Virus record (IMG/VR): IMGVR_UViG_3300020477_000990
Coordinates: 248,001-312,000 of that record
DNA: 64,000 nt
Reading direction: 5' to 3' (one strand)
Position 1 is the first letter of the stretch; the number at the start of each line of letters is the position of its first letter. The position numbers and the translations under genes are program-made. Positions 2,602-55,597 of the stretch are shown here, piece by piece. Below the pieces are notes generated by a model. The model did not search any database and was not told the DNA's origin. It saw only the letters and a program-made list of their open reading frames with translations.

Positions 2602-2891
2602 TGCAAATAGCAGAAGTATACAGTCAAGATTTAGATGAAGCACGTTTGATATTTGGACGTAAAGGTACAAAGGTAGTTAAAAAATACAGATGTACTTTTG
2701 GTAGAAAAAAAGGACGTATTGTTTCTAATCCTAGTGTATGCGGAGCCCCTTTAGATATTAAAAAAAGATTTACCCTTAAAAAAACAAGAGCACGAATGGG
2801 ACAAAGAATTATTAGAAAAGCATTAAGAACTAAAAGGTTTAATCCAGCGTCTAGACGTGTTGCAAAAATGAATAGAGCACTTAGACGTTAA
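2601..2891 (+). CDS. small highly basic hypothetical protein
   Basis: 96 aa, K/R-rich, translationally coupled. Confidence 0.6.
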   Translation: MQIAEVYSQDLDEARLIFGRKGTKVVKKYRCTFGRKKGRIVSNPSVCGAPLDIKKRFTLKKTRARMGQRIIRKALRTKRFNPASRRVAKMNRALRR

Positions 2892-2894
2892 ATA
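2889..2894 (+). promoter_or_regulatory. T4-type late promoter core TAAATA
   Basis: TAAATA 8 nt before the ATG at 2903; no SD. Confidence 0.45.
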
Positions 2895-2902
2895 CATACG
2901 TC

Positions 2903-3988
2903 ATGAACTATTATAATACTTACAATAGAATCGAAATAGAAATCACTTCAAAATGTAATGCGAGGTGTCCTGGTTGTTCTAGAAATGTAAATGGAATAAC
3001 AAATCCTCAATTACAAGTACAAGATTTATCATCTGAAAATTTTATAAAGTACGTCCCTAAAGAAGCATTAAAAGGAAAAAAGATTGAGTTTTGTGGGGTG
3101 TTTGGTGATCCAGTAATGCACAAAGATTTTATTACTATTGTAGAACATTGCCGATTATCAGAACCTTATTCTATTTCTATAGATACAAATGGTGGATCAC
3201 AGCCAACTAGTTGGTGGGAAAAACTTGCAACACTAGGAGTTGAAGTACAATGGAGTGTTGATGGTCATAGAAAAACAAATCATTTGTATAGAGTAAATGT
3301 AAAGTTTGATAAAATTTTAGAAAATATGAAAGCATTTTCTAAAGCAGGTGGTAAAGGTACATGGGAGTATATTGTATTTGATCATAATGAAAGTGAAATT
3401 AGTATAGCTAAAAAAGAAGCTCATGCTTTAGGTTTTGATTTTAATATTAGAAGAAATAGCAGAAATAATGAAGAAGGTTATATATCATACATTAAAGAAA
3501 AAGTAGCTGGAAAAGTTGTAACTACAAAATTTAAGGTAACACAATCAAATCCAGTACATAAGCATAGTGAAACAGAAACAGCTAAAAAAGAAGTCCAAAA
3601 AGATAATTTGCAAATTAGTTGTTTACTATATAATGATAAAAAAATGTTTTTAGGATTTGATGGACGTATTTGGCCTTGTTGTTGGTTCCATGATATCTAT
3701 AATGGTGCAGGTAATCCACAAGTAGAAGAAACATCACATGAATTAGCAACGCATCATAAACTTAAAAAATTAGATAGTAGGTATGGAGCCGGCTGGAATA
3801 GTATTATACACAATAGTTGGAATGATATATTAGGGCATGAATATTACCAAAAAATATTGCCAAATACATTTGATAGTACTAGCCCTAATTTTTTAAAAGA
3901 AGAAGCATTACCAAAATGTGCAAAAAAATGTAGGAAATCTGGAGCACTACGAGATGTAGAGCGAGTTAAATATATTGGTGATAAATAA
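2903..3988 (+). CDS. radical SAM enzyme with C-terminal SPASM/twitch domain (subfamily A)
   Basis: EITSKCNARCPGC (CxxxCxxC), FCGVFGDP, SVDG..TNHLYR; C-terminal SC...WPCC...C..KC. Confidence 0.85.
   Translation: MNYYNTYNRIEIEITSKCNARCPGCSRNVNGITNPQLQVQDLSSENFIKYVPKEALKGKKIEFCGVFGDPVMHKDFITIVEHCRLSEPYSISIDTNGGSQPTSWWEKLATLGVEVQWSVDGHRKTNHLYRVNVKFDKILENMKAFSKAGGKGTWEYIVFDHNESEISIAKKEAHALGFDFNIRRNSRNNEEGYISYIKEKVAGKVVTTKFKVTQSNPVHKHSETETAKKEVQKDNLQISCLLYNDKKMFLGFDGRIWPCCWFHDIYNGAGNPQVEETSHELATHHKLKKLDSRYGAGWNSIIHNSWNDILGHEYYQKILPNTFDSTSPNFLKEEALPKCAKKCRKSGALRDVERVKYIGDK
3980..3987 (+). promoter_or_regulatory. late promoter GATAAATA, leaderless geometry
   Basis: 5 nt before the ATG at 3993. Confidence 0.5.
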
Positions 3989-3992
3989 TTAT

Positions 3993-4433
3993 ATGAGCTT
4001 AAAAGACGATATTATTAATGGATTAGATAAATCAACAGAGTTTACTGACAGACTCAGTAAATTGGTTCATTTACCAAGATCAGTAGTTAAATCATTAACT
4101 GAACCATTGGGGCTTAAAGATTATATGAGTTTATCTAAAGCAGTTGATGAAGAAGATCCAGAAAGTGCTAAAAAAATATTATTAGATGTTGGATTTAGCA
4201 AATTAGATAATACAACCCAAAAGTTGTTATCTGAATATTCTAGTAAAGGTTCAACTAAAGCAGGAGCTTCGCAATCAGCTGGTAATAGAGATGGAAGAAA
4301 CGATACTGATCCAGAAGAAAAACCAGAACCAGCAGTTGATGATGATACAAAAGATGCAATTAATAAAATAGCTGATAAATCAGCTGAAATTGTACAATTT
4401 GCAGATATAGTTGCAAAAAATAATAAAAAGTAG
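3993..4433 (+). CDS. hypothetical protein
   Basis: ATG at 3993, in frame with the track ORF. Confidence 0.6.
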   Translation: MSLKDDIINGLDKSTEFTDRLSKLVHLPRSVVKSLTEPLGLKDYMSLSKAVDEEDPESAKKILLDVGFSKLDNTTQKLLSEYSSKGSTKAGASQSAGNRDGRNDTDPEEKPEPAVDDDTKDAINKIADKSAEIVQFADIVAKNNKK

Positions 4434-22817: not shown

Positions 22818-22825
22818 TATAAATA
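22818..22825 (+). promoter_or_regulatory. late promoter TATAAATA, leaderless geometry
   Basis: 5 nt before the ATG at 22831. Confidence 0.6.
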
Positions 22826-22830
22826 ATATT

Positions 22831-24213
22831 ATGTTTATGGCAATACTTACATTGCTGACTGCATTAAGCATTTCAGCGGTAGCGATTTACTATTCAATTG
22901 CAGGTTTGGCGGCTATATTTGCCGCGGCGGCAATCCCTATTATGATTATGGGTACTGTTCTTGAGGTTGGTAAGTTAGTAGCGGCCTCTTGGTTGTATCA
23001 AAACTGGAAGGCGGCTCCAGGGGCAATTAAAACATATCTATCAATTGCAGTTGTTGTATTAATGCTAATTACGTCAATGGGTATATTTGGATTTTTATCT
23101 AAAGCACACGTAGAGCAAACGTCATTAGGATCTACACAACAAGTTAAATTAAACAACATAGAAGAAAAAATTATTAGATCAGAAAATAAAATTGAACGTT
23201 GGTCAGATGAAATTGCAAGACTTAATAGTGGGCAAAATGTTCGTGTTGATATTTTAATTGATAAGCAAAATGAAGAACTAGCAGTATTGTATGAAAGAAT
23301 TAAAGAAGAAAAGAACGAATTAAGAGCCCAAGCAGATAAAGATATTGAATTACAAAATAATAGATTATTACAAGCAAAAGAACGTAAAGAATCAGATATT
23401 GCCGCGGCACAAGAAAGATTTAAAGGTTCTTTTAGTAAAAGAAAATTAGATGAAGCTATAGCAGAAGCTAAAGCAAATGAACTTGCAGTTGCTTCGGCGG
23501 CACAAAGAATTATTGTAGAAATACAAAATAAGTTACAAGAAAATCTTGCTAAAATTGATGAAAAATATGCTCCACAAATAGAAAATATTAATGCAACAAT
23601 TAACGGTTTAAGATCAGAAGCAAACGTTAAGACAGATAATATTGATACAAGAATTGATGAGTTAGAAATATTCATTGAAGAAGAACAAGATTCGTTAAAC
23701 CAAGTAAATGAAGATAAAATTATTATTGTAATGGAACAGCAAAAACTTGAAGTAGAAGTTGGTCCATTAAAATATATTGCAGAATTTATATATGGGCAAG
23801 AAGCAGATAGAAATTTATTAGAACAAGCAGTACGTTGGGTTATTATTACAATTATATTTGTATTTGATCCACTAGCAGTATGTTTATTAGTAGCGGCTAA
23901 TATGTCACTTATTAGAAGATTTGGAAGAGGATTTGAAAAACAATATGAGTACGATCCTAATTTAATAAAAGAATATACTGGTAAGAAGCCAACAAGTGTA
24001 ACACCAGAGCAAAAAAAAGACGAAAAAGAATTAGCACAGATAAAAGATAGTAATGCTGAATTAGAAAAAAAATTAAGTGAAGCTGAATCAAAATTAGCTG
24101 AACAATTAGATTATCAAAAATCTTTAGAAGATAAACCAGAAAAGTTGGTCATCAATATTGATGAAACAGCTACAATTGATGCAGAAGATGACACCGAGAA
24201 AAAAAAAGGATAA
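22831..24213 (+). CDS. multi-TM membrane protein with a long coiled coil
   Basis: three to four N-terminal hydrophobic helices, heptad core, TM IIFVFDPLAVCLLVAA. Confidence 0.7.
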   Translation: MFMAILTLLTALSISAVAIYYSIAGLAAIFAAAAIPIMIMGTVLEVGKLVAASWLYQNWKAAPGAIKTYLSIAVVVLMLITSMGIFGFLSKAHVEQTSLGSTQQVKLNNIEEKIIRSENKIERWSDEIARLNSGQNVRVDILIDKQNEELAVLYERIKEEKNELRAQADKDIELQNNRLLQAKERKESDIAAAQERFKGSFSKRKLDEAIAEAKANELAVASAAQRIIVEIQNKLQENLAKIDEKYAPQIENINATINGLRSEANVKTDNIDTRIDELEIFIEEEQDSLNQVNEDKIIIVMEQQKLEVEVGPLKYIAEFIYGQEADRNLLEQAVRWVIITIIFVFDPLAVCLLVAANMSLIRRFGRGFEKQYEYDPNLIKEYTGKKPTSVTPEQKKDEKELAQIKDSNAELEKKLSEAESKLAEQLDYQKSLEDKPEKLVINIDETATIDAEDDTEKKKG

Positions 24214-24569
24214 CCAAGTCCGAGGTAGTTAATCTTGTTATTGATGATATTAATGAAATTAAAACACAAGAAATACTAAATGAACAGGCCAATGTTTCAA
24301 CGGTCGAAGAGTATAAGGTTGAAAAGCCAGATGAAATTTTGGTTGAAAATATTAAAATTGAACCAAAACCAGAAGTTGAAATGAAATTTAAAGAAGAAGT
24401 AAATGTTAGGATGAAGGAAATAGAAAAAAAGATTGACACAGAGCAAAATCGTGTTATTATTAATAAAACTATGAAAAATGAAAGTTTAAAGAAAACAACA
24501 AATACTTCACAAGAAATTGGATGGCTAAAAGGCTATGTTGGCAAGATTGCTGGAGATAAAGAAGAATAA
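24192..24569 (+). CDS. frame-3 continuation of the preceding gene, reached via the A9 run
   Basis: frame open from 24192 to TAA at 24569; no ATG in the first ~60 codons. Confidence 0.55.
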   Translation, partial: HREKKRITKSEVVNLVIDDINEIKTQEILNEQANVSTVEEYKVEKPDEILVENIKIEPKPEVEMKFKEEVNVRMKEIEKKIDTEQNRVIINKTMKNESLKKTTNTSQEIGWLKGYVGKIAGDKEE

Positions 24570-25258
24570 TGGATTGGACAAATTTAGACAAAGTTGAGTT
24601 TGCTATTACAACACATTGTCAAGCTAAATGTCCGTTGTGTGCTAGAACCAATAAAGAAACTTTAGAAAAAGTAAATTGGTTGCCATTGCATCATTTATCT
24701 TTAGATGAATACAAAAATGCTGTTGATCAATTGTTACCTAATAGAGATATAGATTTTTGTGGTGATTACGGTGATCCAATAATGCATCCACAAATTGAAG
24801 ATTTTATTGATTATGCTATACAAAAAAATCACAATGTAAGTGTACACACAAATGGTGGCTTACGTACAAAAGATTGGTATATTAAAGTTGCAAAGAAATA
24901 TAATAAACTTTTAATGGTGTTTGCTATTGATGGAATAGACGAAGAAACAAATTCAAAATATAGAGTAGGAGTTAACTTTAATCGTGCTTGGGAAAATATG
25001 ATAGCTCATGCAGAAAATAGTAATGGGCATACAGTTTGGAACTTTTTAGTATTTGATTTTAATTATGATCAATTAGATAGAGCAAAAGAATTGTGTCAGA
25101 AACATAATATTATATTTGTTCCACATATGAATACTAGAGTAACAGAATACTATGATCATTTAATTAAAGATTTAACTTTAAAAGTGCAATTAGAACAAAA
25201 GTGTGATAATATGTATGATCCAAAATTAACAGAAAGAGTAGCTTTATATGTCGATTAA
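24569..25258 (+). CDS. radical SAM core (subfamily A) without its SPASM domain
   Basis: CQAKCPLC, FCGDYGDP, HTNGG, AIDG..TNSKYR, WNFLVF. Confidence 0.85.
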   Translation: MDWTNLDKVEFAITTHCQAKCPLCARTNKETLEKVNWLPLHHLSLDEYKNAVDQLLPNRDIDFCGDYGDPIMHPQIEDFIDYAIQKNHNVSVHTNGGLRTKDWYIKVAKKYNKLLMVFAIDGIDEETNSKYRVGVNFNRAWENMIAHAENSNGHTVWNFLVFDFNYDQLDRAKELCQKHNIIFVPHMNTRVTEYYDHLIKDLTLKVQLEQKCDNMYDPKLTERVALYVD

Positions 25259-25532
25259 TTGCAAATCAAAAGGTATCATTGTTGATTATAATAATAAAGT
25301 TTACCCTTGTTGCTATGTATTAACTAGAGAAATGTTTCCTGAAGAAAAAAGTAAATATTTAAGTAAGTTAGATAATGATTGGAATGATTTATCAAAGTAT
25401 ACATTAGAAAAAATATTAAGTAATAAAGCATTTACTGAACATTTCAATGAAAAACATTGGAATGATAAAAACAACTGCGATGAGATATGTACGTCTCAAT
25501 GCTCAATAAAGAAAGAAAAAAATAATGCCTAA
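25248..25532 (+). CDS. stand-alone SPASM/twitch domain
   Basis: INC...VYPCC...CDEICTSQC. Confidence 0.75.
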
Positions 25533-26796
25533 GAAAAAAGACGAACAATTTAGTTGTTCATTTTGTGGAAAAAATAGAGAGAAAGTAAAAAAACTTATTG
25601 CAGGACCAAAGGTTTATATTTGTAATGAGTGTATTGAACTTTGTCATTCAATTTTAGAAGAAAGTGATTTACGTCAAGTAGAAGAACGTAAGCAAGAATT
25701 AAAACAAATTATACCAGATGAATTAAAAGCACATTTAGATGAACACGTAATTGGTCAAGAACAAGCTAAAAAAGTTTTAAGTGTAGCAGTATATAACCAT
25801 TATAAAAGATTAGCTAATCCTATAGTAGATGGTGTTGAACTTGAAAAATCAAATGTTTTATTAGTAGGACCAAGTGGCTGTGGTAAAACATTATTAGCAA
25901 AACGTATAGCAGATTATTTAGATGTTCCATTTGCTCAAGCAGATGCAACTACATTAACTGAAAGTGGATATGTTGGCGATGATGTAGAAAATATTATATT
26001 AAGATTATTACAAAATTGTGATTTTGATGTAGCAAAAGCAGAAAAAGGTATTGTTTATATTGATGAAATAGATAAAAAATCACGTAAGTCTGAGTCAACT
26101 TCTATTACTAGAGATGTATCAGGAGAAGGTGTGCAACAAGCATTATTAAAATTGCTTGAAGGTACTATAGTGAGAGTTCCACCAGCTGGTGGAAGAAAAC
26201 ACCCACAGCAAGAAATGATTACTGTTGACACTACAAATATTTTATTTGTTGTAGGTGGAGCATTTGTTGGGTTAGAGGAAATTATTCGTAAAAGACTTAA
26301 TTTGAATACAACAATAGGATTTAATTCTTCATCACCATCAAAAGAAGAAATTGAAAGAGTATTAGAAAGAGCTGAACCAGATGATATAGTTAAATTTGGA
26401 TTAATTCCTGAAATGGTAGGTAGGTTGCCAGTTGTTGTTGCTTGTCATAAACTTGATAAACAACATTTAAATGATATTCTTGTTAAACCTAAAAGTGCCA
26501 TATTAAAGCAATTCCAAAAAATGTTTAAGTTAGATGGAATTGAATTAGAGTTTAGTGATGAAGCAATTGAAGTTGTATGCACTTTAGCATTAAAAAAAGA
26601 TATAGGTGCTAGAGGACTAAGATCTGTTTTAGAAAAGCATTTATTACAATTACAATACGAGTTACCAATGCTTAAAGAACAAGGTGTTGAACGTATTGCA
26701 ATTAATGAAACTTTTATAACAGAAGGAAAGCCACCAATGTTAATATATAAAGAAGTAAATAAAGATAAAGACGGAACGGATAACGGAGCGAAGTGA
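25525..26796 (+). CDS. clpX: ClpX ATPase
   Basis: CSFCG/CNEC zinc domain, [36 protein letters not shown] loop, GARGLR. Confidence 0.97.
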
Positions 26797-27350
26797 AAAA
26801 GCATTTCATTAGAAGAAACAACAAACCAACGGTATTATTAAACTCTGCAATTACCTTTCCAGAAATTAGGTTAATTGATCCAGATGGACAATTTATTGGA
26901 ATAGTTCGAAATCAAGAAGCACATCAAAAAGCCAGAGATGCAGGATTAGATTTAATTTGTATTGCCGATAAGGCAAGTCCTCCTGTTTGCCGTATTATGG
27001 ACTTTGGTAAATGGAATTATGAAAAACAAAAAGCCGATAAGGAAAAGAAAAAGAAAGAACGAGCTAATCGAATTGAATTGCATGAAGTACAATTAAGACC
27101 AGGAACAGATGTTCATGATCTTAAAGTTAAATTAAAAAAAGTACAAGAATTTATAGATGATGGAGATAAAGTAAAAATGGTAATGAAGTTACGAGGTAGA
27201 GAAATTGGGCAAGGAACTATGTTTGTAGATCAATTAAAAGTTATGGTTGCTGGCCAATTAGAATTAGGTAAATTTGATTCTCCACCAAAGCAGTTTGGTA
27301 ATAAAATTATTGCAACAGTTTCTAAACAAAATGAGAAAAAAAATGCTTGA
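26793..27350 (+). CDS. infC: translation initiation factor IF-3
   Basis: [39 protein letters not shown]; GTG start after GGAG. Confidence 0.93.
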
Positions 27351-27374
27351 CAATAATCTAAATTATGTTATTAT
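27347..27374 (+). promoter_or_regulatory. sigma70-type promoter TTGACA-N16-TATTAT (TGn), leaderless geometry
   Basis: -10 ends 6 nt before the ATG at 27381. Confidence 0.7.
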
Positions 27375-27380
27375 ATTATT

Positions 27381-41656: not shown

Positions 41657-41662
41657 TAAATA
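41657..41662 (+). promoter_or_regulatory. late promoter core TAAATA, leaderless geometry
   Basis: 5 nt before the ATG at 41668. Confidence 0.5.
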
Positions 41663-41667
41663 CATAT

Positions 41668-42777
41668 ATGTACAGATATGAAGATATACGAACAGTACAT
41701 TTAGAAATCACAGCGAAATGTCAGGCCGCTTGTTTGCAATGTGATAGAAATGTTAATGGTGGTGAAATAAATCCAAATATTTCACTTGATGAGTTATCTC
41801 TTGAAGATTGCAAAAAAATATTTCCACCTGAATTTGTAAAACAATTAGATAGTTTGTTTATGTGTGGTAATTTAGGTGACCCAGTTATTGCACAAGATTC
41901 ACTTGAAGTAATGGAATATTTACGTAGTCAAAATTCTAATATTTGGTTAAGCATGAATACAAATGCCGGCGCCAAAAAATCAGAGTGGTGGAAAGATTTA
42001 GCAAAAATACTTGGTAAGCAAGGCCATGTAATTTTTAGTTTTGATGGATTAAAAGATACTAATCATTTATATAGGCAAAATGTTAATTGGGATATATGTA
42101 TGGATTCGGCACAGGCGTTTATTGATGCAGGTGGTAGAGCAAGATGGGATTATTTAATATTTGGACATAATCAGCATCAAGTTGAAGATGCAAAAGCATT
42201 ATCAGAACGTATGGGATTTGAAAAATTTATGAGTAAAAAAACTGGTAGATTTTTTAGTAATGTAAAAGCAAAAGGAAAAGAAGAACATCAAGGTGTAAAT
42301 CGTAAAGGTAAACAAACACAAAAACTTACAAAGCCAGATGAAAAATATGTAAACAAAGCTCTTAAGAAAGAAGATTTACTTATAGAAAAATATGGATCTA
42401 TGAATAATTATTATGATAAAGCACATATTAATTGTAAAGTATTAAAAGATATGAATGTATATGTAAGTGCATCAGGACATTTGATGCCTTGTTGTTGGGT
42501 AGCAGGACAAATGTACAAGTGGTGGGAGAAGCCAGGAGAAAATCAAATTTATAGATTTATAGAGCAAGTAGGTGGACTTGATGAGCTATCAGTTTTACAA
42601 CATGGTTTTAAAAAAGTTTTAGAAGGAGACTTTTTTAATAATATAAAAGCAAGTTGGAAAAAAACTTCTTGTAATGGCGGCGATGGAAAATTAAAAGTAT
42701 GTTCTGTTAAATGTGGTACAGAGTTTGATCCATTTGGTGCACAATTTGAAGATAACTTCGTTACAACAGCAAGGTAA
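41668..42777 (+). CDS. radical SAM enzyme with C-terminal SPASM/twitch domain (subfamily A)
   Basis: CQAACLQC, MCGNLGDP, SFDG..TNHLYR, INC...MPCC, CSVKC. Confidence 0.88.
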   Translation: MYRYEDIRTVHLEITAKCQAACLQCDRNVNGGEINPNISLDELSLEDCKKIFPPEFVKQLDSLFMCGNLGDPVIAQDSLEVMEYLRSQNSNIWLSMNTNAGAKKSEWWKDLAKILGKQGHVIFSFDGLKDTNHLYRQNVNWDICMDSAQAFIDAGGRARWDYLIFGHNQHQVEDAKALSERMGFEKFMSKKTGRFFSNVKAKGKEEHQGVNRKGKQTQKLTKPDEKYVNKALKKEDLLIEKYGSMNNYYDKAHINCKVLKDMNVYVSASGHLMPCCWVAGQMYKWWEKPGENQIYRFIEQVGGLDELSVLQHGFKKVLEGDFFNNIKASWKKTSCNGGDGKLKVCSVKCGTEFDPFGAQFEDNFVTTAR

Positions 42778-42786
42778 ATATATAAA

Positions 42787-44256
42787 ATGAGCAATAATAA
42801 ACTACCATCAAAAACGTTTTGTGCGTTACCGTGGATGCATTTATCAACTAGACCAGATGGAAATATGCGAGTATGTTGTACAGCTAACGCAAGTTCAGTA
42901 GGTGCAACTAATGATAAAAAGCATGGTGGACAAGTTGGTATTCTAAAAAAAGATAATGGTGTTCCTGCAAACTTAAATAATTCAGATTTAATGTCATCGT
43001 GGAATAATGATTATATGAAGAACGTTCGTTTACAAATGTTAAACGGAGAAAAACCACCAGCTTGTTTAAAATGTTTTAAAGAAGAAGATGCAGGTCATAA
43101 TTCAAAACGTATGTGGGAAACTGAATATTGGATGAATAGATATTCTTTAGAAGATATGATTGGTGAAACAAAAGAAGACGGTTCTATTCCACCTAAAATT
43201 AGATATATTGATTTGCGTATGGGATCTAAATGTAATTTAAAATGTATTATGTGTAGTCCACATGATTCTTCATTATGGGTCAAAGATTGGTTAGACGTAT
43301 ATCCTACAATTAAAAATCCACAGCTAAAGCAAACAATGGGTTGGGATAATAAAGGTAAAGTACATGGCGCTGGTTATAACTGGCATAAAAATAACGAAGT
43401 ATTTTGGAAGCAGTTATATGAGCAAATACCTCATATGTATCAATTATATTTTGCAGGCGGTGAGTCTACAATTATAGAAGAACATTATACATTATTAGAA
43501 GAAGTTATTAGAAGAGGATATGCTCCTAAAATAGAATTACGTTATAATTCAAATGGTGTTGAAATGCCAGATAGATTATTTGAATTATGGAGTCATTTTA
43601 AAAGAGTGCGTTTTCATTATAGTGTAGATTCAATTGAAGAAATGAATCGTTATATACGTTTTCCTGCAGATTGGGATAATACAGTTAAACAATTTCATTT
43701 GTTAGATAATACAGAAGATAAAGTAGAAGTAACAATTGCCTGTGCAGTACAGGCTTTGAATATACATTATATTCCAGATTTTATTAAATGGAAATGGAAA
43801 CAAAATTTTAAAAAAATAAATGTATGGCCATTTGGAGCAGGTATGTTAAATTATCACTTTGTATATTGGCCTGGGCAATTAAATGTAAAAGCATTGCCAC
43901 AATGGATGAAAAATAAAACAAAAGAAAAATATGAAGCATTTTATCCTTGGTTATTAGAAAATTGGAAACTATCCGGTGCACCAAGTAAAGAAGCATTTAT
44001 GGAAGCAAGTTACGGTATTAAAAGATTAAAAGGAATGATTCAATTTATGATGTCAGAAGATTGGTCAAGACGTATGCCAGAATTTAGAGAATATATTACA
44101 AAATTTGATAAGCAACGTGGCACAGATTTTGCTAAAACTTTTCCGGATATGGCTGATATGTTAGATGAGTCATTAGATTATAGTGTTAAACCAATAACCG
44201 GTGAAAGTATTGATGAAAAAACAGAGAAGGAATTAGAAGATGGCGGAACAATCTGA
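42787..44256 (+). CDS. radical SAM enzyme with N-terminal SPASM/twitch domain (subfamily B)
   Basis: FCALPW...RVCC, CLKC, CNLKCIMC, FAGGE, YNSN. Confidence 0.88.
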   Translation: MSNNKLPSKTFCALPWMHLSTRPDGNMRVCCTANASSVGATNDKKHGGQVGILKKDNGVPANLNNSDLMSSWNNDYMKNVRLQMLNGEKPPACLKCFKEEDAGHNSKRMWETEYWMNRYSLEDMIGETKEDGSIPPKIRYIDLRMGSKCNLKCIMCSPHDSSLWVKDWLDVYPTIKNPQLKQTMGWDNKGKVHGAGYNWHKNNEVFWKQLYEQIPHMYQLYFAGGESTIIEEHYTLLEEVIRRGYAPKIELRYNSNGVEMPDRLFELWSHFKRVRFHYSVDSIEEMNRYIRFPADWDNTVKQFHLLDNTEDKVEVTIACAVQALNIHYIPDFIKWKWKQNFKKINVWPFGAGMLNYHFVYWPGQLNVKALPQWMKNKTKEKYEAFYPWLLENWKLSGAPSKEAFMEASYGIKRLKGMIQFMMSEDWSRRMPEFREYITKFDKQRGTDFAKTFPDMADMLDESLDYSVKPITGESIDEKTEKELEDGGTI

Positions 44257-44806
44257 TTTACATAAAAAGTGGGAAGAAATGAAAGACCACGTTACAAAGC
44301 CACGTAAAGAGTTAGATGGTATGGCTATTTGTCCATTTGCTAAAATGGGATTCAAACGTAATGAAGTTGAAGTTAAATGGGTTAAAAAAGATATGTTTAA
44401 AATTGCCAATGAAGCAATTGAAAATTATCCTGAAGAAAAACAGTTAGTATTATGTATTGGAGATCCAAAAGATTATTCATTAGAAGAATTAGAAAAATGG
44501 GAAAATGAAAACCAAGCAAAAGCAGTTGCAAATGATTTATACATTTATACATCTTATAAGTCAGAAGAAAAACAAGGATCAGTAGGAGTTGAAAAAAATA
44601 CAGATAAACTTATTCCTGGATTAGGTTCTGGTAATAAAGGTTTAGCAATCATACAAATACAAGGGTTAAGTGATTTAAATGAAAAATCTGAATGGGTACA
44701 TAGAAATACAAAGTATTATGATAAATGGAATAAAAAATATTATGATGCTATTGTAAAAAGAAGATATAAAGATAGTAACTATGATAGTGAGGAGTTTGAA
44801 AAATAA
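44240..44806 (+). CDS. hypothetical protein with a CPFAK motif
   Basis: 188 aa inside the radical SAM cluster. Confidence 0.55.
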   Translation: MAEQSDLHKKWEEMKDHVTKPRKELDGMAICPFAKMGFKRNEVEVKWVKKDMFKIANEAIENYPEEKQLVLCIGDPKDYSLEELEKWENENQAKAVANDLYIYTSYKSEEKQGSVGVEKNTDKLIPGLGSGNKGLAIIQIQGLSDLNEKSEWVHRNTKYYDKWNKKYYDAIVKRRYKDSNYDSEEFEK

Positions 44807-45888
44807 TGGTTAATAATTACAATAAATTTTTTAGTGATACGTCTCTAGTAAAGTGCTATTCAGAATTTCAACGATTAGAAGAAGTAATTGTTGGTAGTGC
44901 ATATAAACCAGATTGCTTTGATAGTAGTGAGCAATTTAGCCAAGAAGCCAAAGACTTATTAAAAAGAGTGTTTACAGAAACAGCAGAAGATTTAGAAGTA
45001 CTTGTTAGTATATTAAAAGCTGAAGGCATAATAGTACAACGTCCTAAAGTAATGCAAGATCCACTTGCAAAATATAATATGGGAGAATTTGATATTGAAT
45101 ATGCAAACCAACCTTTGCAACCAAGAGATATATTAGGATTTTATGGTAATAAAATTATTGAAGCATACACAAAAGACAGAACAAGATATTTTGAAAATTG
45201 GTGTTCAAGAGATATATTAAAGCAATATTATTTGCGTGGTGCAGAGTGGATAGCAATGCCACCACCACAATTAAATAAAAAAACATACCAAGATTATTAT
45301 CAAAATAGTGAAGTACTTTTTCATAATGCTAACTTAATTAAATGTGGTAAAGATATATTCCATTCACAATCACATCAAAAAGATCCTGTAAAAGGTAAAG
45401 GTACAGAACAAGGTTTAGAATGGTATAAAAAGCAATTGCCAGAATTTACATTTAATGAAATACCTGTTGGAGGTCATGCTGATGGTAAAATTGCATTAAT
45501 TAAACCAGGTTTATTAGTAACTTGGAAAAAAGAATGGATACCAGAAAAGTTAAAATCATGGGATTGTATTATAACAGAATCAGGAACAAAGTTTCCAGAA
45601 GATTTTAAAAAAACACGTAAAGAACATTTTTATAAAGATTATATTGAAAAATGGTTATCGCATTGGATTGGTTATGTTGATGAAACAGTATTTGATGTTA
45701 ATATGTTGAGTATATCAGAAGATAAAGTTATTTGTACAGGAACAGATAAAGAAGTATTTGCAAAATTAGAACAACACGGAGTAACACCTATATATTGGAA
45801 ATTTAGACATCAATATTTTTGGGATGGCGGAGTACATTGTTTAACAGCAGATGTAAGACGTAAAGGAGAACAGGAAAATTATTTCTAA
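44806..45888 (+). CDS. amidinotransferase (pentein fold; Gly/inosamine-phosphate amidinotransferase-like)
   Basis: LEEVIVG, QPRD, GHADG, DVNML, GGVHCLT catalytic Cys. Confidence 0.85.
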   Translation: MVNNYNKFFSDTSLVKCYSEFQRLEEVIVGSAYKPDCFDSSEQFSQEAKDLLKRVFTETAEDLEVLVSILKAEGIIVQRPKVMQDPLAKYNMGEFDIEYANQPLQPRDILGFYGNKIIEAYTKDRTRYFENWCSRDILKQYYLRGAEWIAMPPPQLNKKTYQDYYQNSEVLFHNANLIKCGKDIFHSQSHQKDPVKGKGTEQGLEWYKKQLPEFTFNEIPVGGHADGKIALIKPGLLVTWKKEWIPEKLKSWDCIITESGTKFPEDFKKTRKEHFYKDYIEKWLSHWIGYVDETVFDVNMLSISEDKVICTGTDKEVFAKLEQHGVTPIYWKFRHQYFWDGGVHCLTADVRRKGEQENYF

Positions 45889-47171
45889 TGGACAATCAAG
45901 CATGGAAGAAACGTGATTGGGATTGGCACAAAACAATCACTAAAAAATGTGTAGCACCTTGGCATAGTTTAACTATCGAATGGGATGGTGAAGTATATGC
46001 TGATGCTGTGGCGTTTAAACCATATGGAAGTATATATGAAAATACTTTAACTGAATTATGGAATTCTCCAAAAGCAGTTAATCTTCGTAAATCATGGAGC
46101 AAAGGATTGCCAGATAATATAATATGTGCTAGTTGTATAAAGAAAGAAGAAACAGTAGGTAGTTCTAGACGACAATACTTTTATAGAAATTTGCCATCTG
46201 AATTATTAAAAACAGCAACATATGATCCAGAGCAAAAACCTAATATATGGTATTTAGAAATTAACTCATCAAATAAATGTAATTTAAAATGTAGAATGTG
46301 TAATGGGCAAGTTTCAAGTACTTGGATTAAAGAAGAAACACAATTAGCAAAAATATCTCCTAGTTGGATGCCAAAAAGAAAAAATGGAAAATACTCTAGA
46401 GTTGATTTTGATGTTATTAAAAATGTTTTAGAAAAAAGAGAATATTTTAAAGATTTGCAATTTTTAAAGTTAACAGGCGGTGAGCCATTAATGGAAGAAC
46501 AAAATTATCAATTAATGGAACAATTTATTGAATGGGATATTGCAAAAAATGTTATGCTTGATATTAACACTAACGGAACATTTATGAATGAAAGATTAAT
46601 AAACATTGCTAAACATTTTAAATTAGTTAAGTTACATATAAGTTTAGAAGGAACAGGAGAGTTATATCAATATATACGTGGTGGAGAAAACTTTACTTTA
46701 GATCAATTAGAAACAAATATAATTGAATTCAACAAGTTACCAAATACAGTAATAATTTATACTGTTACAGTACAAATATATAATATTTTTAATTTATCAG
46801 ATATATGGAATTGGTATTTAAAAATAAGAAAACCAACTAATGAAATTTATTTTAAAAATGTTGTAGTTAATCCTCCACATTTAAATTTTCAAATATTACC
46901 TAATAGTTTAAAGTTAGAAGCATATGAAATAATGAAACAAGCAGATTTACCACAAGGTGAGTATTGGGAATTAGATGATTTTAGTCAAGGTGATATAGGA
47001 TTTAGCAATATTATGAAGAATTTACAGAATCTAAATACATATAACGAGCAACGTTTAAAAGAGTTTGTCCAGTTTACACGTGATATTGATACTATAAGAA
47101 AAACGGATATTAAAAAAATTGTCCCGCAATTAGCAGGATTATTTGAGGAAGTATATGAAGCAAGAGCCTAA
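45888..47171 (+). CDS. radical SAM enzyme, subfamily B
   Basis: CVAPW, CASC, CNLKCRMC, TGGEPL, INTNGT, SLEG...YIRG. Confidence 0.87.
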   Translation: MDNQAWKKRDWDWHKTITKKCVAPWHSLTIEWDGEVYADAVAFKPYGSIYENTLTELWNSPKAVNLRKSWSKGLPDNIICASCIKKEETVGSSRRQYFYRNLPSELLKTATYDPEQKPNIWYLEINSSNKCNLKCRMCNGQVSSTWIKEETQLAKISPSWMPKRKNGKYSRVDFDVIKNVLEKREYFKDLQFLKLTGGEPLMEEQNYQLMEQFIEWDIAKNVMLDINTNGTFMNERLINIAKHFKLVKLHISLEGTGELYQYIRGGENFTLDQLETNIIEFNKLPNTVIIYTVTVQIYNIFNLSDIWNWYLKIRKPTNEIYFKNVVVNPPHLNFQILPNSLKLEAYEIMKQADLPQGEYWELDDFSQGDIGFSNIMKNLQNLNTYNEQRLKEFVQFTRDIDTIRKTDIKKIVPQLAGLFEEVYEARA

Positions 47172-48372
47172 AACATTTTGTATTTTGCCATGGATGCATT
47201 TAGCAACAAATTCTAGTGGAAATTATAGAGTATGTTGTAATTCAACTCCAGGTAAAAATTTTATTTTAGATAAAAATGGTGAGCCTTATAAAATTTATAA
47301 AGCTGATATTAAAGAAATGTGGAACTCTGAAACATATAGAAATTTACGTTTGCAACTACTTAAAGAAGAATATCCAGATATGTGTCAACGTTGCTGGAGA
47401 GAAGAAGCAAGTGATATTAAATCTGCTCGTCAAAGTTTTAACGAAGCATATTCACATTTTATTGATGGAGCATTATCAAATACAGATATAGAAGGTAAAG
47501 CACCATTAAAAGTAGGGTATGTTGATTTACGTTTAGGAAACTTATGTAATTTAAAATGTCGTATGTGTAATCCATGGGCAAGTAACCAATGGACTAAAGA
47601 ATGGAATAAAACAACATCATATGATGGTAAAGATATACCAGAAGATGAACGTACGAGATTAGAGCATATGGATTGGCCCACAAATGAAAAAACGTGGGAA
47701 AACTTAATGCCAATTATAGATTCAGTAGAAGAAATTTACTTAACAGGTGGAGAACCTACATTAGCATTAGAACAATATAAGTTATTTGATAAATGTATTG
47801 AATTAGACAAAGCAAAAGATATTGTATTAAAGTATAATACTAATTTAACTAATATACCACCTAAAATGATTGAGTATTGGAAAAACTTTAAAAAGATTAA
47901 GATTAATGCTTCAATAGATGGGTTTGATGAGCTTAATAGATATATTAGGTATCCAACAAATTGGAAGTCAGTTGATAAAAATCTTAAAATATTTCATGAA
48001 ATAGAAAAAGAAGGTAAAATGAGAGTGCAGATTCATACTACTGTACAATTATATAATATACTTGATATAACAGATTTATTTGAATATGTTGATCAGTTTG
48101 GTTATTTTCCGTATTTAAATATATTAGATCATCCAGATTACTTAAATGTAAGAGTGTTGCCATTGCACCTTAAAGAATGTGTAGCAGAAGAATTACAAAA
48201 GTATATTGATAAGCCAAAAGTAAAAGGGTTAATAACTTATATGATGGACGAAGATTGGTCACAGCATACAGATAAATTTATTGAATATACTAATTGGCTA
48301 GATAAATCACGTAAGCAAAATGTTCTTGATATTGTTCCTGGATTAGAAGACATAATAAATTTAAAAAAATAA
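47155..48372 (+). CDS. radical SAM enzyme, subfamily B
   Basis: ATG at 47155 after GAGGA; FCILPW...RVCC, CQRC, CNLKCRMC, TGGEP, YNTN, SIDG. Confidence 0.88.
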   Translation: MKQEPKTFCILPWMHLATNSSGNYRVCCNSTPGKNFILDKNGEPYKIYKADIKEMWNSETYRNLRLQLLKEEYPDMCQRCWREEASDIKSARQSFNEAYSHFIDGALSNTDIEGKAPLKVGYVDLRLGNLCNLKCRMCNPWASNQWTKEWNKTTSYDGKDIPEDERTRLEHMDWPTNEKTWENLMPIIDSVEEIYLTGGEPTLALEQYKLFDKCIELDKAKDIVLKYNTNLTNIPPKMIEYWKNFKKIKINASIDGFDELNRYIRYPTNWKSVDKNLKIFHEIEKEGKMRVQIHTTVQLYNILDITDLFEYVDQFGYFPYLNILDHPDYLNVRVLPLHLKECVAEELQKYIDKPKVKGLITYMMDEDWSQHTDKFIEYTNWLDKSRKQNVLDIVPGLEDIINLKK

Positions 48373-54225: not shown

Positions 54226-54592
54226 TAAACTTACACAATGGGGATCTTTAATCGGTGTTATTTGTGCTATCGGTGGTGGATTTTATGCTTGGGGTGAATT
54301 TAATACAAGATTAGCAAATATTGAAAGTAGACCAGTTGCTGACATGACATCTATAACTGAAGATGTAGCAAATTTAAAAGTAGATATGGTTGATAGAATT
54401 ACTGCTATTGAAGATAAACTTGAAGCACAATCAGATACAGAATTAGGTACAATCCAAGCCGACATTAGTGAAATAAAAGACTCACTAGTTAAAGCATTAA
54501 AAGATATCGAGATTCAAAGTAAAGTAAATGAATTGCAAGATCAAAAAATTGAACAAGTAAGATTAAAAGCAACAAATCCATTAGCAAATTAA
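54212..54592 (+). CDS. single-TM coiled-coil protein
   Basis: N-terminal TM WGSLIGVICAIGGGFYAWG, then heptads. Confidence 0.65.
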   Translation: MNVINKLTQWGSLIGVICAIGGGFYAWGEFNTRLANIESRPVADMTSITEDVANLKVDMVDRITAIEDKLEAQSDTELGTIQADISEIKDSLVKALKDIEIQSKVNELQDQKIEQVRLKATNPLAN

Positions 54593-55584
54593 ATTTCAGC
54601 GAATGTATGTTGTTTTTTTCCAAAGTGAGAACAACTCTTTTGACATCTTGACAAGAACATAGGATGGTTTTCATTCCAACTATCTTTTAGTATTTGTGAG
54701 AACCATTCATGATCTAATATATCTTGAATATCATGTTCAAGTGAATTATTCCAATTAGAACTATATTTAGAAAATTTTTCAGACATATCATCACGTTTGT
54801 ACCAATTATTATCATACAAATAACAACAAGGCCAAATTTGATAATTAGCACCAAAGTAAATTTCACCTTCATGTATTAGTTTACATTTTATATTTAAATT
54901 TTTAGTTTCGTTTTTAATTTCAGGATGTTGATATTTTTTATTTGTTAAAGATACTTTGTTTATAACTTCTTTAGTTTTTTTATTAACTACAGTATGCGTA
55001 CTTTCTTGTTTCATAGAATAACGTAGTGAAAATTTAAATCCAAGTTTAGTAGATAGTTGTTGTGCTTTTTCTATATCATCGATATTATGATCAAATGGAT
55101 TATAAACCCATTGTCCTTTGCCACCAGCATCAGAATATGCAGTCATATTTTCTACAAGTTTATTCCAATTAACACCAACTCTATAAATGTGATTTGTATT
55201 TTCAAAGCCATCTACACAAAAACGCATATCTAATTTTGGATTGTCTTTGCTAATTGCTCCTAGTTCTGCCCAATATTCTTTTGAACGCAATCCACCGTTA
55301 GTAGAAACAATTATAACCTTTGGATTCATAGATAATGTGTATTCACATATTTCTATAAATTCTTGATTTACTAATGGATCGCCTAAAACACCACAATAAA
55401 AAATTTCTTTGTTTTCTATATATTCTTTTGAGTGTAATACTTTTTTATAGTTTTCTAGAGTAATATCAGCTAATTCTACATCTGGGTTAGTTTCCCCTTT
55501 TAATGTTCTAGCACACCCAGGACATCTAGCATTACATCTAGTGGTTAATTCTACTTCTATTTTCTTAAGATTTTGTACGAGCAT
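54589..55584 (-). CDS. radical SAM enzyme with C-terminal SPASM/twitch domain (subfamily A)
   Basis: ELTTRCNARCPGC, YCGVLGDP, CVDG..TNHIYR, IKC...WPCC, CQKSC. Confidence 0.87.
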   Translation of the reverse strand: MLVQNLKKIEVELTTRCNARCPGCARTLKGETNPDVELADITLENYKKVLHSKEYIENKEIFYCGVLGDPLVNQEFIEICEYTLSMNPKVIIVSTNGGLRSKEYWAELGAISKDNPKLDMRFCVDGFENTNHIYRVGVNWNKLVENMTAYSDAGGKGQWVYNPFDHNIDDIEKAQQLSTKLGFKFSLRYSMKQESTHTVVNKKTKEVINKVSLTNKKYQHPEIKNETKNLNIKCKLIHEGEIYFGANYQIWPCCYLYDNNWYKRDDMSEKFSKYSSNWNNSLEHDIQDILDHEWFSQILKDSWNENHPMFLSRCQKSCSHFGKKQHTFAEI

Positions 55585-55589
55585 AGTAA

Positions 55590-55597
55590 TATTTATA
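55590..55597 (-). promoter_or_regulatory. late promoter TATAAATA on the minus strand, leaderless geometry
   Basis: 5 nt before the minus-strand ATG at 55584. Confidence 0.6.

What the first reader, a model, noticed from the sequence alone, without database searches (positions are those of the whole stretch)
2889..55597. Radical SAM genes sit behind late promoters
Seen: (T/G)ATAAATA or TAAATA lies 5-8 nt before the ATG of the radical SAM genes at 2903, 29300, 41668, 42787 and 54589(-). The gene at 24569 follows the late unit starting at 22818. Established: TATAAATA is the T4 gp55 late promoter. Inference: the chemistry occurs during morphogenesis, pointing to virion protein/glycan or packaged-DNA modification rather than metabolic takeover.
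Basis: partly seen in the sequence, partly recalled or inferred. Interest (0 to 1): 0.7.

Follow-up and report, generated by a model that had tools for sequence, protein, structure and literature searches.

The report
Leaderless late promoters before radical SAM genes
In a 328-kb marine T4-related jumbo phage with 23 radical SAM genes, a T4-type late-promoter box (TAAATA) sits so close to the ATG of one radical SAM subfamily and of many virion genes that the mRNAs should start at or 3 nt before the start codon, which suggests, but does not prove, that these enzymes are made during virion assembly.

Summary
TAAATA ends 5-8 nt before the ATG at all five named genes. Genome-wide this geometry is far above an AT-matched background: 31 of 429 genes against 5.8±2.5 in dinucleotide shuffles.

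The box fits a T4-type late promoter:
- It extends to (A)TAAATA-N4-T-R, the same spacing as T4's -13..-6 box.
- It has no -35 element.
- It is depleted genome-wide and 18-fold enriched between genes.
- It precedes portal, sheath, tail tube, neck, terminase and many virion genes.
- The genome encodes a gp55-like late sigma, itself behind a sigma70-type promoter.

New point: 23 of the 26 TAAATA-N4-TATG sites in the genome open an ORF, so about 26 late genes are predicted to be leaderless or to have a 3-nt leader. This was not seen in T4, PA5oct or CP220.

Enrichment among radical SAM genes comes from one paralogue subfamily, group B (5 of 6 genes, p=8e-6).

Corrections:
- At 2889 and 42775 the TAA is the upstream stop codon, and 42775 is a weak site.
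- 24569 has its own sigma70-like promoter and is a split gene.
- The window also holds radical SAM genes at 45888 and 47143.

No transcript data exist. Late timing and the enzymes' target remain inferred.

The parts
2889..2894 (+). TAAATA box, followed by N4 and then C-G at -1/+1. It predicts a 3-nt leader before ATG 2903. Its TAA is the stop codon of ORF 2601-2891.
2903..3988 (+). Radical SAM gene, group B (CNARCPGC at aa 18, Cys-rich C-terminal domain).
3982..3995 (+). TAAATA-N4-TATG. Predicted leaderless start (ATG 3993) of the 146-aa gene that follows the radical SAM gene. Its TAA is that gene's stop codon.
22818..22833 (+). Perfect TATAAATA plus N4-T-ATG. Predicted leaderless late promoter of the 460-aa membrane-like protein 22831-24213.
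24433..24460 (+). Sigma70-type promoter TTGACA-16-TGTTATTAT (11/12 matches plus TG). It lies between the 22818 unit and radical SAM gene 24569 and is followed by a 32-aa ORF (24472-24570) whose stop overlaps the ATG (TAATG).
24569..25532 (+). Group-B radical SAM gene split into two overlapping ORFs: core 24569-25258 (229 aa) and Cys-rich C-terminal domain 25248-25532 (94 aa). It has no late box of its own.
29032..29039 (+). Perfect TATAAATA directly after tRNA-Asp. Predicted start at about 29045, 5 nt before ATG 29050 of an 81-aa gene that ends 4 nt before the radical SAM gene.
29286..29291 (+). TAAATA box (GATAAATA-CTGA-T-A). It predicts a 3-nt leader before ATG 29300 and lies inside the last codons (D-K-Y-stop) of the upstream gene. 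It is conserved in orthologous loci at 65-79% protein identity.
29300..30352 (+). Radical SAM gene, group B. Syntenic relatives place it between ClpX, IF3, S21, NadE and SAM decarboxylase on one side and Hsp20 and DnaK on the other.
41657..41670 (+). TAAATA-CATA-T-ATG. Predicted leaderless late promoter. It sits in an 11-nt intergenic gap directly after the TAG stop at 41654-41656.
41668..48372 (+). Tightly packed six-gene unit: group-B radical SAM 41668-42777, group-A (N-terminal twitch) radical SAM 42787-44256, two unknown genes (44240-44806 and 44806-45888), and group-A radical SAM genes 45888-47171 and 47143-48372. No convincing plus-strand terminator lies inside it.
42775..42780 (+). TAAATA whose TAA is the stop codon of gene 41668-42777. 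It has A-A instead of T-R at the predicted start, so it is a weak, possibly fortuitous site.
55582..55597 (-). Perfect TATAAATA-TTAC-T-ATG on the minus strand. Predicted leaderless late promoter in a 126-nt intergenic region.
54589..55584 (-). Radical SAM gene, group B, the only minus-strand gene in its neighbourhood.
26793..27713 (+). Phage-encoded translation initiation factor IF3 (26793-27350) and ribosomal protein bS21 (27381-27713). These are candidates for modulating translation of Shine-Dalgarno-less or leaderless mRNAs (inference only).

Best explanation
The window is part of a complete 328,149-bp marine jumbo phage whose terminase and core virion genes are T4-related. Host RNA polymerase probably transcribes it in two regimes. 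Sigma70-type promoters (GGTTGACA-N17-TGnTATAAT) serve replication, nucleotide-metabolism and regulatory genes. T4-type late promoters, (A)TAAATA at -12..-6 with no -35 element, are probably read by the phage's gp55-like sigma.

Initiation is predicted at the purine 6 nt after the box, which is preceded by T. In about half of the late promoters a 13-45-nt leader with a Shine-Dalgarno sequence follows. In about 26 genes the initiating purine is the A of the ATG (box at -11), or lies 3 nt before it (box at -14), which gives leaderless or near-leaderless mRNAs without a Shine-Dalgarno sequence.

Five of the six 'group-B' radical SAM paralogues carry such a promoter of their own. These genes have CNARCPGC at the N-terminus, a Cys-rich twitch/SPASM-like C-terminus and no N-terminal twitch domain. 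The promoter at 41657 probably also drives three N-terminal-twitch radical SAM genes downstream. These enzymes would then be made together with virion proteins. Their family is typical of enzymes that modify peptides or proteins, which makes a protein made late in infection the most likely target.

Shown: the motif, its geometry, the statistics, the gene partition and the presence of the sigma. Inferred: the start sites, late timing, leaderless translation and the substrate.
For: - Geometry and enrichment. 31/429 genes have the box at -14..-11, against 5.8 +/- 2.5 in shuffles, and all 31 start with ATG. 23 of the 26 TAAATA-N4-TATG sites in the genome open an ORF of at least 50 aa. Spacing controls give few sites (N3 0, N5 4, N6 3, N8 3), and three same-composition control motifs give 0/4, 0/10 and 2/3 ORF-opening sites. 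GTG or TTG versions open no ORF.
- Start dinucleotide. T-R sits at fixed distance in 55% of boxes upstream of genes against 16% elsewhere. A at -12 is found in 57% against 9%. T4's box spans -13..-6 (PMC2988020).
- Shine-Dalgarno-like sequences. 25/36 genes have one when the leader is 13-45 nt, against 5/17 and 1/9 in the 0-nt and 3-nt classes.
- Genome-wide distribution. TAAATA occurs 490 times against about 800-900 expected. ATAAATA is 17.7-fold enriched between genes. TTGAC is present upstream of only 2/68 boxes.
- gp55-like sigma. It lies at genome 192150-192956 (phrog_12791 2.9e-81, phrog_234 7.7e-23; T4 gp55 8.7e-5) next to gp47/gp46 homologues and behind a sigma70-type promoter. No other sigma70-family protein and no RNA polymerase beta subunit were detected.
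- Box-bearing genes. Portal, sheath, tail tube, gp13, gp4, terminase, a gp15-like gene, an Mtd-like fibre protein and at least 8 'virion structural' families carry the box. Genes behind sigma70-type promoters are DNA polymerase, an exonuclease, a QueE-like gene, S21 and the gp55-like gene.
- Radical SAM genes. Group B 5/6, p=8e-6. Fourteen of 23 radical SAM genes trace to a late box as the nearest upstream promoter, and two more do so after start correction.
- Relatives. The -11 peak recurs in loci of related marine phages, 11 at -11 against 1-2 at neighbouring positions. The box is retained in orthologous loci at 65-79% identity.
- Precedent. An ATAAATA late promoter was predicted for the related jumbo phages CBB and GAP32 (PMC5259590).
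Against: - There are no transcript 5' ends and no time course. The only RNA run from the source sample holds a few short fragments, mostly 90-95% identical.
- gp45 was not found by sequence and gp33 was not tested, so the T4 activation mechanism cannot be assumed.
- T at -13 of the T4 octamer is not conserved here.
- The boxes at 29286 and 2889 overlap upstream coding sequence or a stop codon. The conservation of 29286 in orthologues could therefore reflect the D-K-Y codons.
- More distant orthologues carry a sigma70-type -10 element or sit in tandem arrays without the box.
- The genes are tightly packed with few terminators, so read-through from earlier promoters is possible and expression need not be exclusively late.
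- Late boxes also precede non-structural genes, for example the Suf Fe-S assembly operon and possibly IF3.
Confidence: 0.62

Rival explanations
1. The boxes arise by chance from AT-rich DNA and from TAA stop codons in tightly packed genes.
For: GC content is 31.8%. At 2889 and 42775 the TAA is the upstream stop codon, and 41657 directly follows a TAG stop. The full octamer is not over-represented in the window.
Against: - The observed count is about 10 sd above dinucleotide shuffles, and no shuffle reaches it.
- Only 5/31 boxes overlap a stop codon, and 23/31 are fully intergenic.
- Spacing and composition controls give almost no sites.
- The flanking positions -12, -1 and +1 are also conserved.
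Confidence: 0.03
2. The box is an RNA-level translation signal rather than a promoter. It would be a Shine-Dalgarno-independent ribosome recruitment element, perhaps used by ribosomes that carry phage bS21, uL11 or IF3.
For: The distance to the ATG is fixed, and these genes lack a Shine-Dalgarno sequence. The phage encodes IF3, bS21, uL11 and EF-G.
Against: - The same extended box, with the same T-R dinucleotide, occurs 13-45 nt upstream of 36 other genes that mostly do have a Shine-Dalgarno sequence.
- The hexamer is depleted genome-wide on both strands, which is not expected if it were simply an RNA-level signal.
- It matches the recognition element of the encoded gp55-type sigma.
- The Y(-1)/R(+1) dinucleotide fits initiation of transcription.
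Confidence: 0.08
3. The box is a real promoter but not strictly a late one. Alternatively, the radical SAM genes are mainly expressed by read-through from upstream sigma70-type promoters. In either case, timing says little about function.
For: - There are few terminators and the genes are tightly packed.
- Sigma70-like promoters lie upstream at 24433, 27347, 30665 and 39806.
- The window is rich in auxiliary genes (NrdA, EF-G, ClpX, IF3, DnaK) that are not morphogenetic.
- A distant orthologue has a TGnTATAAT -10 element instead.
- gp33 and gp45 were not identified.
Against: Box-bearing and sigma70-type genes divide cleanly by function. The minus-strand gene 54589-55584 cannot be reached by read-through from its plus-strand neighbours, and the box is the only promoter-like element found by inspection upstream of it.
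Confidence: 0.22

Closest known systems
T4 late promoters (TATAAATA at -13..-6, read by gp55 with gp33 and the gp45 clamp)
   Same: An AT-rich box ends 6 nt before the start. There is no -35 element. A gp55 homologue is encoded next to gp47/gp46 homologues. The box precedes structural and packaging genes. The motif is depleted genome-wide.
   Different: - The conserved core is TAAATA, with A preferred at -12. T at -13 is not conserved.
- gp45 was not detectable by sequence and gp33 was not tested.
- About 26 promoters are placed so that the start coincides with the ATG or lies 3 nt before it. The TAAATA-N4-TATG pattern is not enriched in T4 (3 sites against 2 in the control).
Predicted ATAAATA late promoter of the Rak2-like jumbo phages CBB and GAP32 (PMC5259590), and PA5oct, the closest isolate by terminase (56% identity)
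   Same: The motif is the same and the phages are T4-related jumbo phages. CBB also has a gp55-like sigma, and its authors likewise found no gp33 or gp45.
   Different: Those predictions do not describe a fixed -11/-14 geometry. PA5oct shows no enrichment of TAAATA-N4-TATG (6 sites against 7 in the control), and its published promoter set is sigma70-type (PMC7318152). Those phages are not reported to have a radical SAM expansion.
Campylobacter phages CP220 and CPt10 (T4-like, with 11-12 radical SAM genes; PMC2853527)
   Same: A T4-related myovirus with many radical SAM paralogues of unknown role, partly clustered. There is weak direct homology to group B (25% identity, E 3e-6).
   Different: This genome has 23 such genes, plus a QueE-like gene, in a marine phage. 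Genes in the inspected 18-kb CP220 radical SAM cluster use ordinary AAGGA Shine-Dalgarno leaders and lack the box-ATG arrangement. The CP220 cluster is linked to glycosyltransferase and amidinotransferase genes. None was found among the window neighbours scanned with Pfam.
Leaderless mRNAs (lambda cI from PRM; common in Actinobacteria, Deinococcus and archaea)
   Same: The predicted transcripts begin with AUG and have no Shine-Dalgarno sequence. Only ATG starts are used.
   Different: Here the arrangement would be a regulon tied to a phage late sigma in a T4-related phage. Full-text searches found no description of this. The start sites are inferred, not mapped.
NF033640 N-terminal twitch-domain radical SAM proteins, and SPASM/twitch peptide or protein maturases
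   Same: Group-A genes are clear members (266-425 bits against a cut-off of 170). Group B shares the core and has a C-terminal C...PCCW...CxxxC region like a twitch or SPASM domain.
   Different: Group B lacks the N-terminal twitch domain and scores only 39-60 bits. No solved structure is closer than E 2.5e-7 over the core. The substrate is unknown.

Membership tests
T4-type (gp55-dependent) late promoter | A TATAAATA-like box ends 6 nt upstream of the start site (-13..-6). | tested here: met
   TAAATA-N4-T-R: T-R at the fixed distance in 55% of gene-proximal boxes against 16% elsewhere, and A at -12 in 57% against 9%. T4 numbering comes from PMC2988020. T at -13 is not conserved, and the start sites are inferred.
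T4-type (gp55-dependent) late promoter | No -35 element. | tested here: met
   TTGAC is present in the -45..-25 region of 2 of 68 boxes, and no position upstream of -13 is conserved.
T4-type (gp55-dependent) late promoter | The phage encodes a gp55-family sigma. | tested here: met
   Genome 192150-192956: phrog_12791 2.9e-81, phrog_234 7.7e-23, T4 gp55 8.7e-5 at 36-37% identity over the region-2 part.
T4-type (gp55-dependent) late promoter | Co-activator gp33 and sliding clamp gp45. | tested here: inconclusive
   gp45 was not found with the T4 protein, PF02916 or PF09116. A gp44 clamp loader is present. gp33 was not searched. The authors of CBB report the same absence (PMC5259590).
T4-type (gp55-dependent) late promoter | Drives morphogenesis genes, late and dependent on replication. 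| tested here: inconclusive
   The gene partition is met. Timing could not be tested because the RNA run was uninformative.
Leaderless mRNA | The primary 5' end lies at the A of the AUG. | not testable with these tools
   Inferred from the box-to-ATG distance of exactly 5 nt with T at -1 in 17/17 called genes. No usable reads were available.
Leaderless mRNA | AUG only, with no GUG or UUG, and no Shine-Dalgarno sequence. | tested here: met
   All 31 genes start with ATG, against 81% of the other genes. TAAATA-N4-TGTG occurs 0 times. TAAATA-N4-TTTG occurs 4 times and opens no ORF. Shine-Dalgarno-like sequences are found in 5/17 and 1/9 genes against 25/36.
Radical SAM superfamily (PF04055) | A CxxxCxxC cluster motif and a core-domain match. 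| tested here: met
   The motif is present in all 23 genes. PF04055 is at or above its cut-off for 2903, 24569, 29300 and 42787. Genes 41668 and 54589 fall below it but cluster with the others as BLAST paralogues.
NF033640 N-terminal twitch radical SAM | A full-length match above 170 bits that includes the N-terminal Cys-rich domain. | tested here: met
   Met for group A only: 42787 scores 425 bits, 45888 scores 266 and 47143 scores 403.
NF033640 N-terminal twitch radical SAM | The same feature, applied to the group-B genes that carry the late box. | tested here: not met
   Scores are 39-60 bits over the core only, with no N-terminal domain. Group B is a related but separate subfamily.
SPASM/twitch auxiliary-cluster domain | A C-terminal Cys motif that binds an extra Fe-S cluster. 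| tested here: inconclusive
   The alignment shows C...PCCW...CxxxC in the five full-length group-B genes and in the split-off ORF 25248-25532. PF13186 is recorded for some homologues. No structure was predicted.

The most novel reading that the evidence does not exclude
This marine jumbo-phage lineage runs a dedicated late 'leaderless regulon'. A gp55-type sigma would start about 26 mRNAs exactly at, or 3 nt before, their AUG. The phage's own IF3, bS21, uL11 and EF-G would retune host ribosomes late in infection to favour these Shine-Dalgarno-less messages. The regulon would include a phage-specific radical SAM subfamily, supplied with Fe-S clusters by a late-expressed Suf operon, that post-translationally modifies virion or other late proteins.
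Probability: 0.15. Interest if true: 0.85.

Novelty: new variant of a known kind. Interest (0 to 1): 0.6.

Why it matters
T4-type late promoters and radical-SAM-rich T4-like phages are each known. Two things appear new.

- **A late promoter fused to the start codon.** The box is placed so exactly that nearly every TAAATA-N4-TATG in a 328-kb genome is a gene start. If the start sites are confirmed, this would be a phage-encoded sigma producing a class of leaderless mRNAs. It gives a concrete reason to ask why such phages carry IF3, bS21, uL11 and EF-G.
- **A phage-specific radical SAM subfamily with its own late promoters.** The subfamily has more than 580 hits in IMG/VR and is embedded in the structural module in this phage and in relatives. 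This narrows the long-open question of what the many phage radical SAM enzymes do (open since CP220 in 2010) to a testable idea: modification of late or virion proteins, not DNA.

The motif also gives a cheap way to correct gene starts and to classify late genes in uncultured marine jumbo phages.

Tried and rejected
- **Sequencing runs.** The stretch is held by many marine metagenomes. The only RNA run from the source sample gave four short contig fragments, three of them 90-95% identical, so there was no 5'-end or expression information. The second read-laying run was not spent.
- **Megablast against isolated phages.** No relative was found.
- **Host inference from ClpX.** The best bacterial matches are 51-58% identical and spread over many phyla, so they are uninformative.
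- **Sequence search against solved structures.** Group B gave only core-domain matches (tetraether lipid synthase, NifB). The group-A gene 42787 gave nothing.
- **CP220, PA5oct and T4.** None shows the box-ATG arrangement.
- **Stop-codon artefact.** Rejected, because only 5/31 boxes overlap a stop.
- **Duplication of paralogues together with their upstream regions.** By inspection, the upstream sequences share nothing beyond the box.
- **Small ORFs upstream of the radical SAM genes as a shared precursor family** (2601, 29050, 41399). No paralogy appeared in the all-against-all BLAST and there were no Pfam hits. The idea is left open, not supported.
- **Rfam.** The window holds only the six tRNAs.
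- **Literature.** Full-text searches for leaderless late T4-type transcripts found nothing relevant.
- **Not done.** No structure prediction or complex prediction was run. Neither would have decided the promoter question.


Full report
**What the window is.** The window is bases 248,001-312,000 of a 328,149-bp virus record with direct terminal repeats, which CheckV rates as complete. GC content is 31.8% and 358 of 429 called genes are on one strand. Its large terminase is T4-type and closest to Pseudomonas jumbo phage PA5oct (56%), then Atu_ph07 and the 121Q/PBECO4 group. BLAST against T4 proteins finds gp4, gp13, gp15, gp17, gp18, gp20, gp21, gp23, gp25, gp44, gp46, gp47, gp55 and UvsW. The DNA occurs in many marine metagenomes.

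**The radical SAM genes.**
- A PF04055 search of the whole genome gives 22 hits. With the weak 41668 gene there are 23 radical SAM genes, and a QueE-like one was found later.
- All-against-all BLAST puts 22 of them in one paralogue cluster, together with the 94-aa ORF at window 25248-25532.
- Group A has 16 genes of 388-507 aa with CxxxCxxC at about aa 27-160. The three window members tested (42787, 45888, 47143) are clear members of NF033640, 'N-terminal twitch domain radical SAM' (266-425 bits against a cut-off of 170).
- Group B has six genes: window 2903, 24569, 29300, 41668 and 54589(-), and genome 224363. The Cys motif lies at aa 17-31, there is no N-terminal twitch domain, and there is a C-terminal C...PCCW...CxxxC region.
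- A B12-binding radical SAM gene lies at genome 68294.

**Checking the observation.** Across the genome, TAAATA is the commonest hexamer upstream of genes, with sharp peaks starting at -11 (17 genes) and -14 (11 genes).
- 31/429 genes have it at -14..-11, against 5.8 +/- 2.5 (maximum 16) in 500 dinucleotide-preserving shuffles. The best same-composition hexamer reaches 13, and that hexamer overlaps the motif.
- Only 5 of the 31 use the upstream gene's TAA stop, and 23 are fully intergenic.
- Radical SAM genes are enriched (6/23 against 25/406, p=0.0037). The signal comes from group B (5/6, p=8e-6), while the remaining 17 radical SAM genes (group A plus the B12-type gene) have 1/17.

**What the box is.** It extends beyond the hexamer.
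- Boxes within 60 nt upstream of genes have A at -12 in 57% of cases, against 9% elsewhere. T-then-purine follows exactly 4 nt after the box in 55%, against 16% elsewhere. With the purine as +1, TAAATA occupies -11..-6, the same placement as the last six bases of T4's TATAAATA at -13..-6 (PMC2988020).
- No -35 element is present.
- TAAATA is depleted genome-wide (490 against about 800-900 expected from Markov models). ATAAATA is 17.7-fold enriched in intergenic DNA.
- The only comparably enriched intergenic motif is GGTTGACA, which pairs with TGnTATAAT as classical sigma70-type promoters.
- The genome encodes a gp55-like late sigma (phrog_12791 2.9e-81; T4 gp55 8.7e-5) next to gp47/gp46 homologues, as in T4. 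That gene sits behind a sigma70-type promoter.
- No other sigma70-family protein and no RNA polymerase beta subunit were detected. The T7-like polymerase search was uninformative because its control did not respond.

**Which genes carry which promoter.** Genes behind the box include portal, sheath, tail tube, gp13, gp4, terminase, a gp15-like gene, an Mtd-like fibre protein, large fibre-like proteins and many 'virion structural protein' families. Annotated genes behind sigma70-type promoters are DNA polymerase, an exonuclease, a QueE-like gene, S21, Hsp20 and the gp55-like gene, and none is structural. An ATAAATA late promoter had already been predicted for the related jumbo phages CBB and GAP32 (PMC5259590). 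Calling the box a late promoter is therefore well grounded, though by inference only.

**The new point: geometry.** The predicted leader lengths fall into three classes: 0 nt (17 genes), 3 nt (9 genes) and 13-45 nt (36 genes). Long-leader genes mostly have a Shine-Dalgarno sequence (25/36). The 0-nt and 3-nt classes mostly do not (5/17 and 1/9).
- Of all 26 TAAATA-N4-TATG sites in the genome, 23 open an ORF of at least 50 aa.
- Changing the spacing gives few sites (N3 0, N5 4, N6 3, N8 3). Three same-composition control motifs give 0/4, 0/10 and 2/3 ORF-opening sites.
- GTG or TTG versions open no ORF.
- After TAAATA-N4-TAT the next base is G (26 sites) or A (23 sites), and almost never T or C.
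- This scan also corrected several gene starts, including a group-A radical SAM gene (genome 145014-146195, minus strand) and the gene after 2903 (ATG 3993).
- The arrangement is not enriched in PA5oct (6 against 7 in the control), T4 (3 against 2) or CP220 (2 against 1). It recurs in 4-kb loci from related marine phages, with 11 boxes at -11 against 1-2 at neighbouring positions.

The simplest reading is that these promoters start transcription at the A of the ATG, or 3 nt before it, and so yield leaderless mRNAs. Two full-text searches found no description of this for T4-type late promoters.

**The named genes one by one.**

| Gene | Box and predicted leader | Comment |
|---|---|---|
| 41668 | strict form, 0 nt | intergenic |
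| 54589(-) | strict form, 0 nt | intergenic; the only minus-strand gene locally, so read-through cannot explain it |
| 29300 | strict form, 3 nt | box lies in the last codons of an 81-aa gene that has its own perfect TATAAATA at 29032 |
| 2903 | C-G instead of T-R, 3 nt | TAA is the upstream stop codon |
| 42787 | A-A at the predicted start, weak | TAA is the upstream stop codon; more likely co-transcribed from 41657 |
| 24569 | no box of its own | see below |

- The box at 29286 is retained in orthologues at 65-79% identity, but protein-coding constraint could explain that.
- Genes 41668-48372 are tightly packed, with no convincing plus-strand terminator. The 41657 promoter could therefore serve four radical SAM genes.
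- Gene 24569 does not simply follow the 22818 unit. A 355-nt spacer holds TTGACA-16-TGTTATTAT (11/12 matches plus TG) and a 32-aa ORF that overlaps the ATG.
- Gene 24569 is also split into a 229-aa core and a 94-aa Cys-rich C-terminal ORF.

Overall, 14 of 23 radical SAM genes trace to a late box as the nearest upstream promoter, and two more do so after start correction.

**Function.** The group-B family is widespread in uncultured phages, with at least 580 IMG/VR hits and homologues down to 29% identity in the protein collection. Among isolates it has only weak matches, to Pelagibacter phage Mosig and the CP220 group. CP220 and CPt10 are known for 11-12 radical SAM genes of unknown role (PMC2853527).

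Context favours a role in the late phase:
- Group-B gene 224363 lies between the tail tube and sheath genes on one side and gp4 and terminase on the other.
- Orthologues at 48% identity lie next to gp9/gp10-like baseplate genes, Ig-like (He_PIG) proteins and an Fe-S assembly gene.
- The phage's SufBD operon also follows a late box.

The best partial family matches are SPASM/twitch maturases, many of which act on peptides or proteins.

DNA modification is less likely. The QueE-like gene is behind a sigma70-type promoter, and a TTGACA-N17-TATTAT element is visible just upstream of QueD in the sequence. The substrate remains unknown, and a late promoter alone does not show a structural role.

**Limits.** No transcript data could be obtained. 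gp45 was not detected and gp33 was not searched. The host is unknown. Gene calls are my own longest-ORF calls, with some starts corrected by the motif itself, so counts of 'genes with the box' are approximate. The site-based test does not depend on those calls.

**Verdict.** The functional conclusion is only partly supported. The added finding of a start-codon-fused, probably leaderless, late promoter class makes this a new variant of a known system.

Noticed in passing
window 18007-20076, 20839-21261, 26793-27350, 27381-27713: The phage encodes a full-length EF-G, ribosomal protein uL11, initiation factor IF3 and ribosomal protein bS21. All are above the Pfam cut-offs. IF3 and bS21 are syntenic in related contigs. 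A possible late box lies 26 nt before the IF3 start (window 26756). IF3 is known to discriminate against leaderless mRNAs, so a link to the leaderless gene class is worth testing.
   Followed up: partly
window 24472-25532: The group-B radical SAM gene is split into a 229-aa core ORF and an overlapping 94-aa Cys-rich C-terminal ORF in another frame. It is preceded by a 32-aa ORF whose stop overlaps the ATG (TAATG). This could be a frameshifted pseudogene, a two-subunit enzyme, or a precursor-enzyme pair.
   Followed up: partly
genome 64230-72805 (outside the window; loci L004 and L005): A late box precedes an operon with SufB/D-like Fe-S assembly genes (65019-66485, and a paralogue at 71517), short-chain dehydrogenases and a B12-binding radical SAM methyltransferase-like gene (68294). 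The phage seems to bring Fe-S cluster assembly for its radical SAM complement.
   Followed up: partly
genome 64-157 kb (L004-L010): This is a large island of paralogue families interleaved with group-A radical SAM genes: Asp/Asn beta-hydroxylase-like (3 copies), TauD-like dioxygenases (3), QueC-like PP-loop proteins (3) and a six-member family without a Pfam match. It suggests a multi-enzyme modification pathway.
   Followed up: partly
window 21701-22153; genome 18132-19058: QueD/PTPS and a QueE-like radical SAM gene point to 7-deazaguanine synthesis, possibly for DNA modification. The QueE-like gene is behind a sigma70-type promoter. A TTGACA-N17-TATTAT element upstream of QueD was seen only by reading the sequence, not by a scan.
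   Followed up: partly
window 21310-21700: A perfect TATAAATA is followed by a 68-nt leader that looks less AT-rich than its surroundings, a 62-aa ORF (21391-21579) and a long hairpin. The region folds better than shuffles (z = -2.76) and has no Rfam match.
   Followed up: partly
window 25525-26796, 27682-28801, 30781-33145, 33253-33816: ClpX, NAD synthase, SAM decarboxylase, Hsp20, DnaK and a MotA/ExbB-like protein are encoded around radical SAM gene 29300. The order is conserved in related marine contigs (L099-L102).
   Followed up: partly
loci L022, L031, L040, L052, L064, L068 (IMG/VR relatives): Upstream of group-B homologues in other phages, a related element TAAGTAC(G/A)TATATA-ATG recurs, with TAAGTA in place of TAAATA at -14. 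It may be a variant box recognised by a diverged late sigma.
   Followed up: no
loci L023, L024, L029, L032, L038, L039 and others: In many relatives, group-B genes form tandem arrays. The upstream paralogue ends ...QF-stop and the stop abuts the next ATG (TTTAAATG), which suggests translational coupling instead of individual promoters.
   Followed up: no
genome-wide: Several sigma70-type promoters end 4-10 nt before the annotated ATG (for example genome 3393, 40445, 135363 and 275347, and the TGTATAAT before radical SAM gene 74159). Leaderless starts may therefore not be limited to the late class.
   Followed up: no
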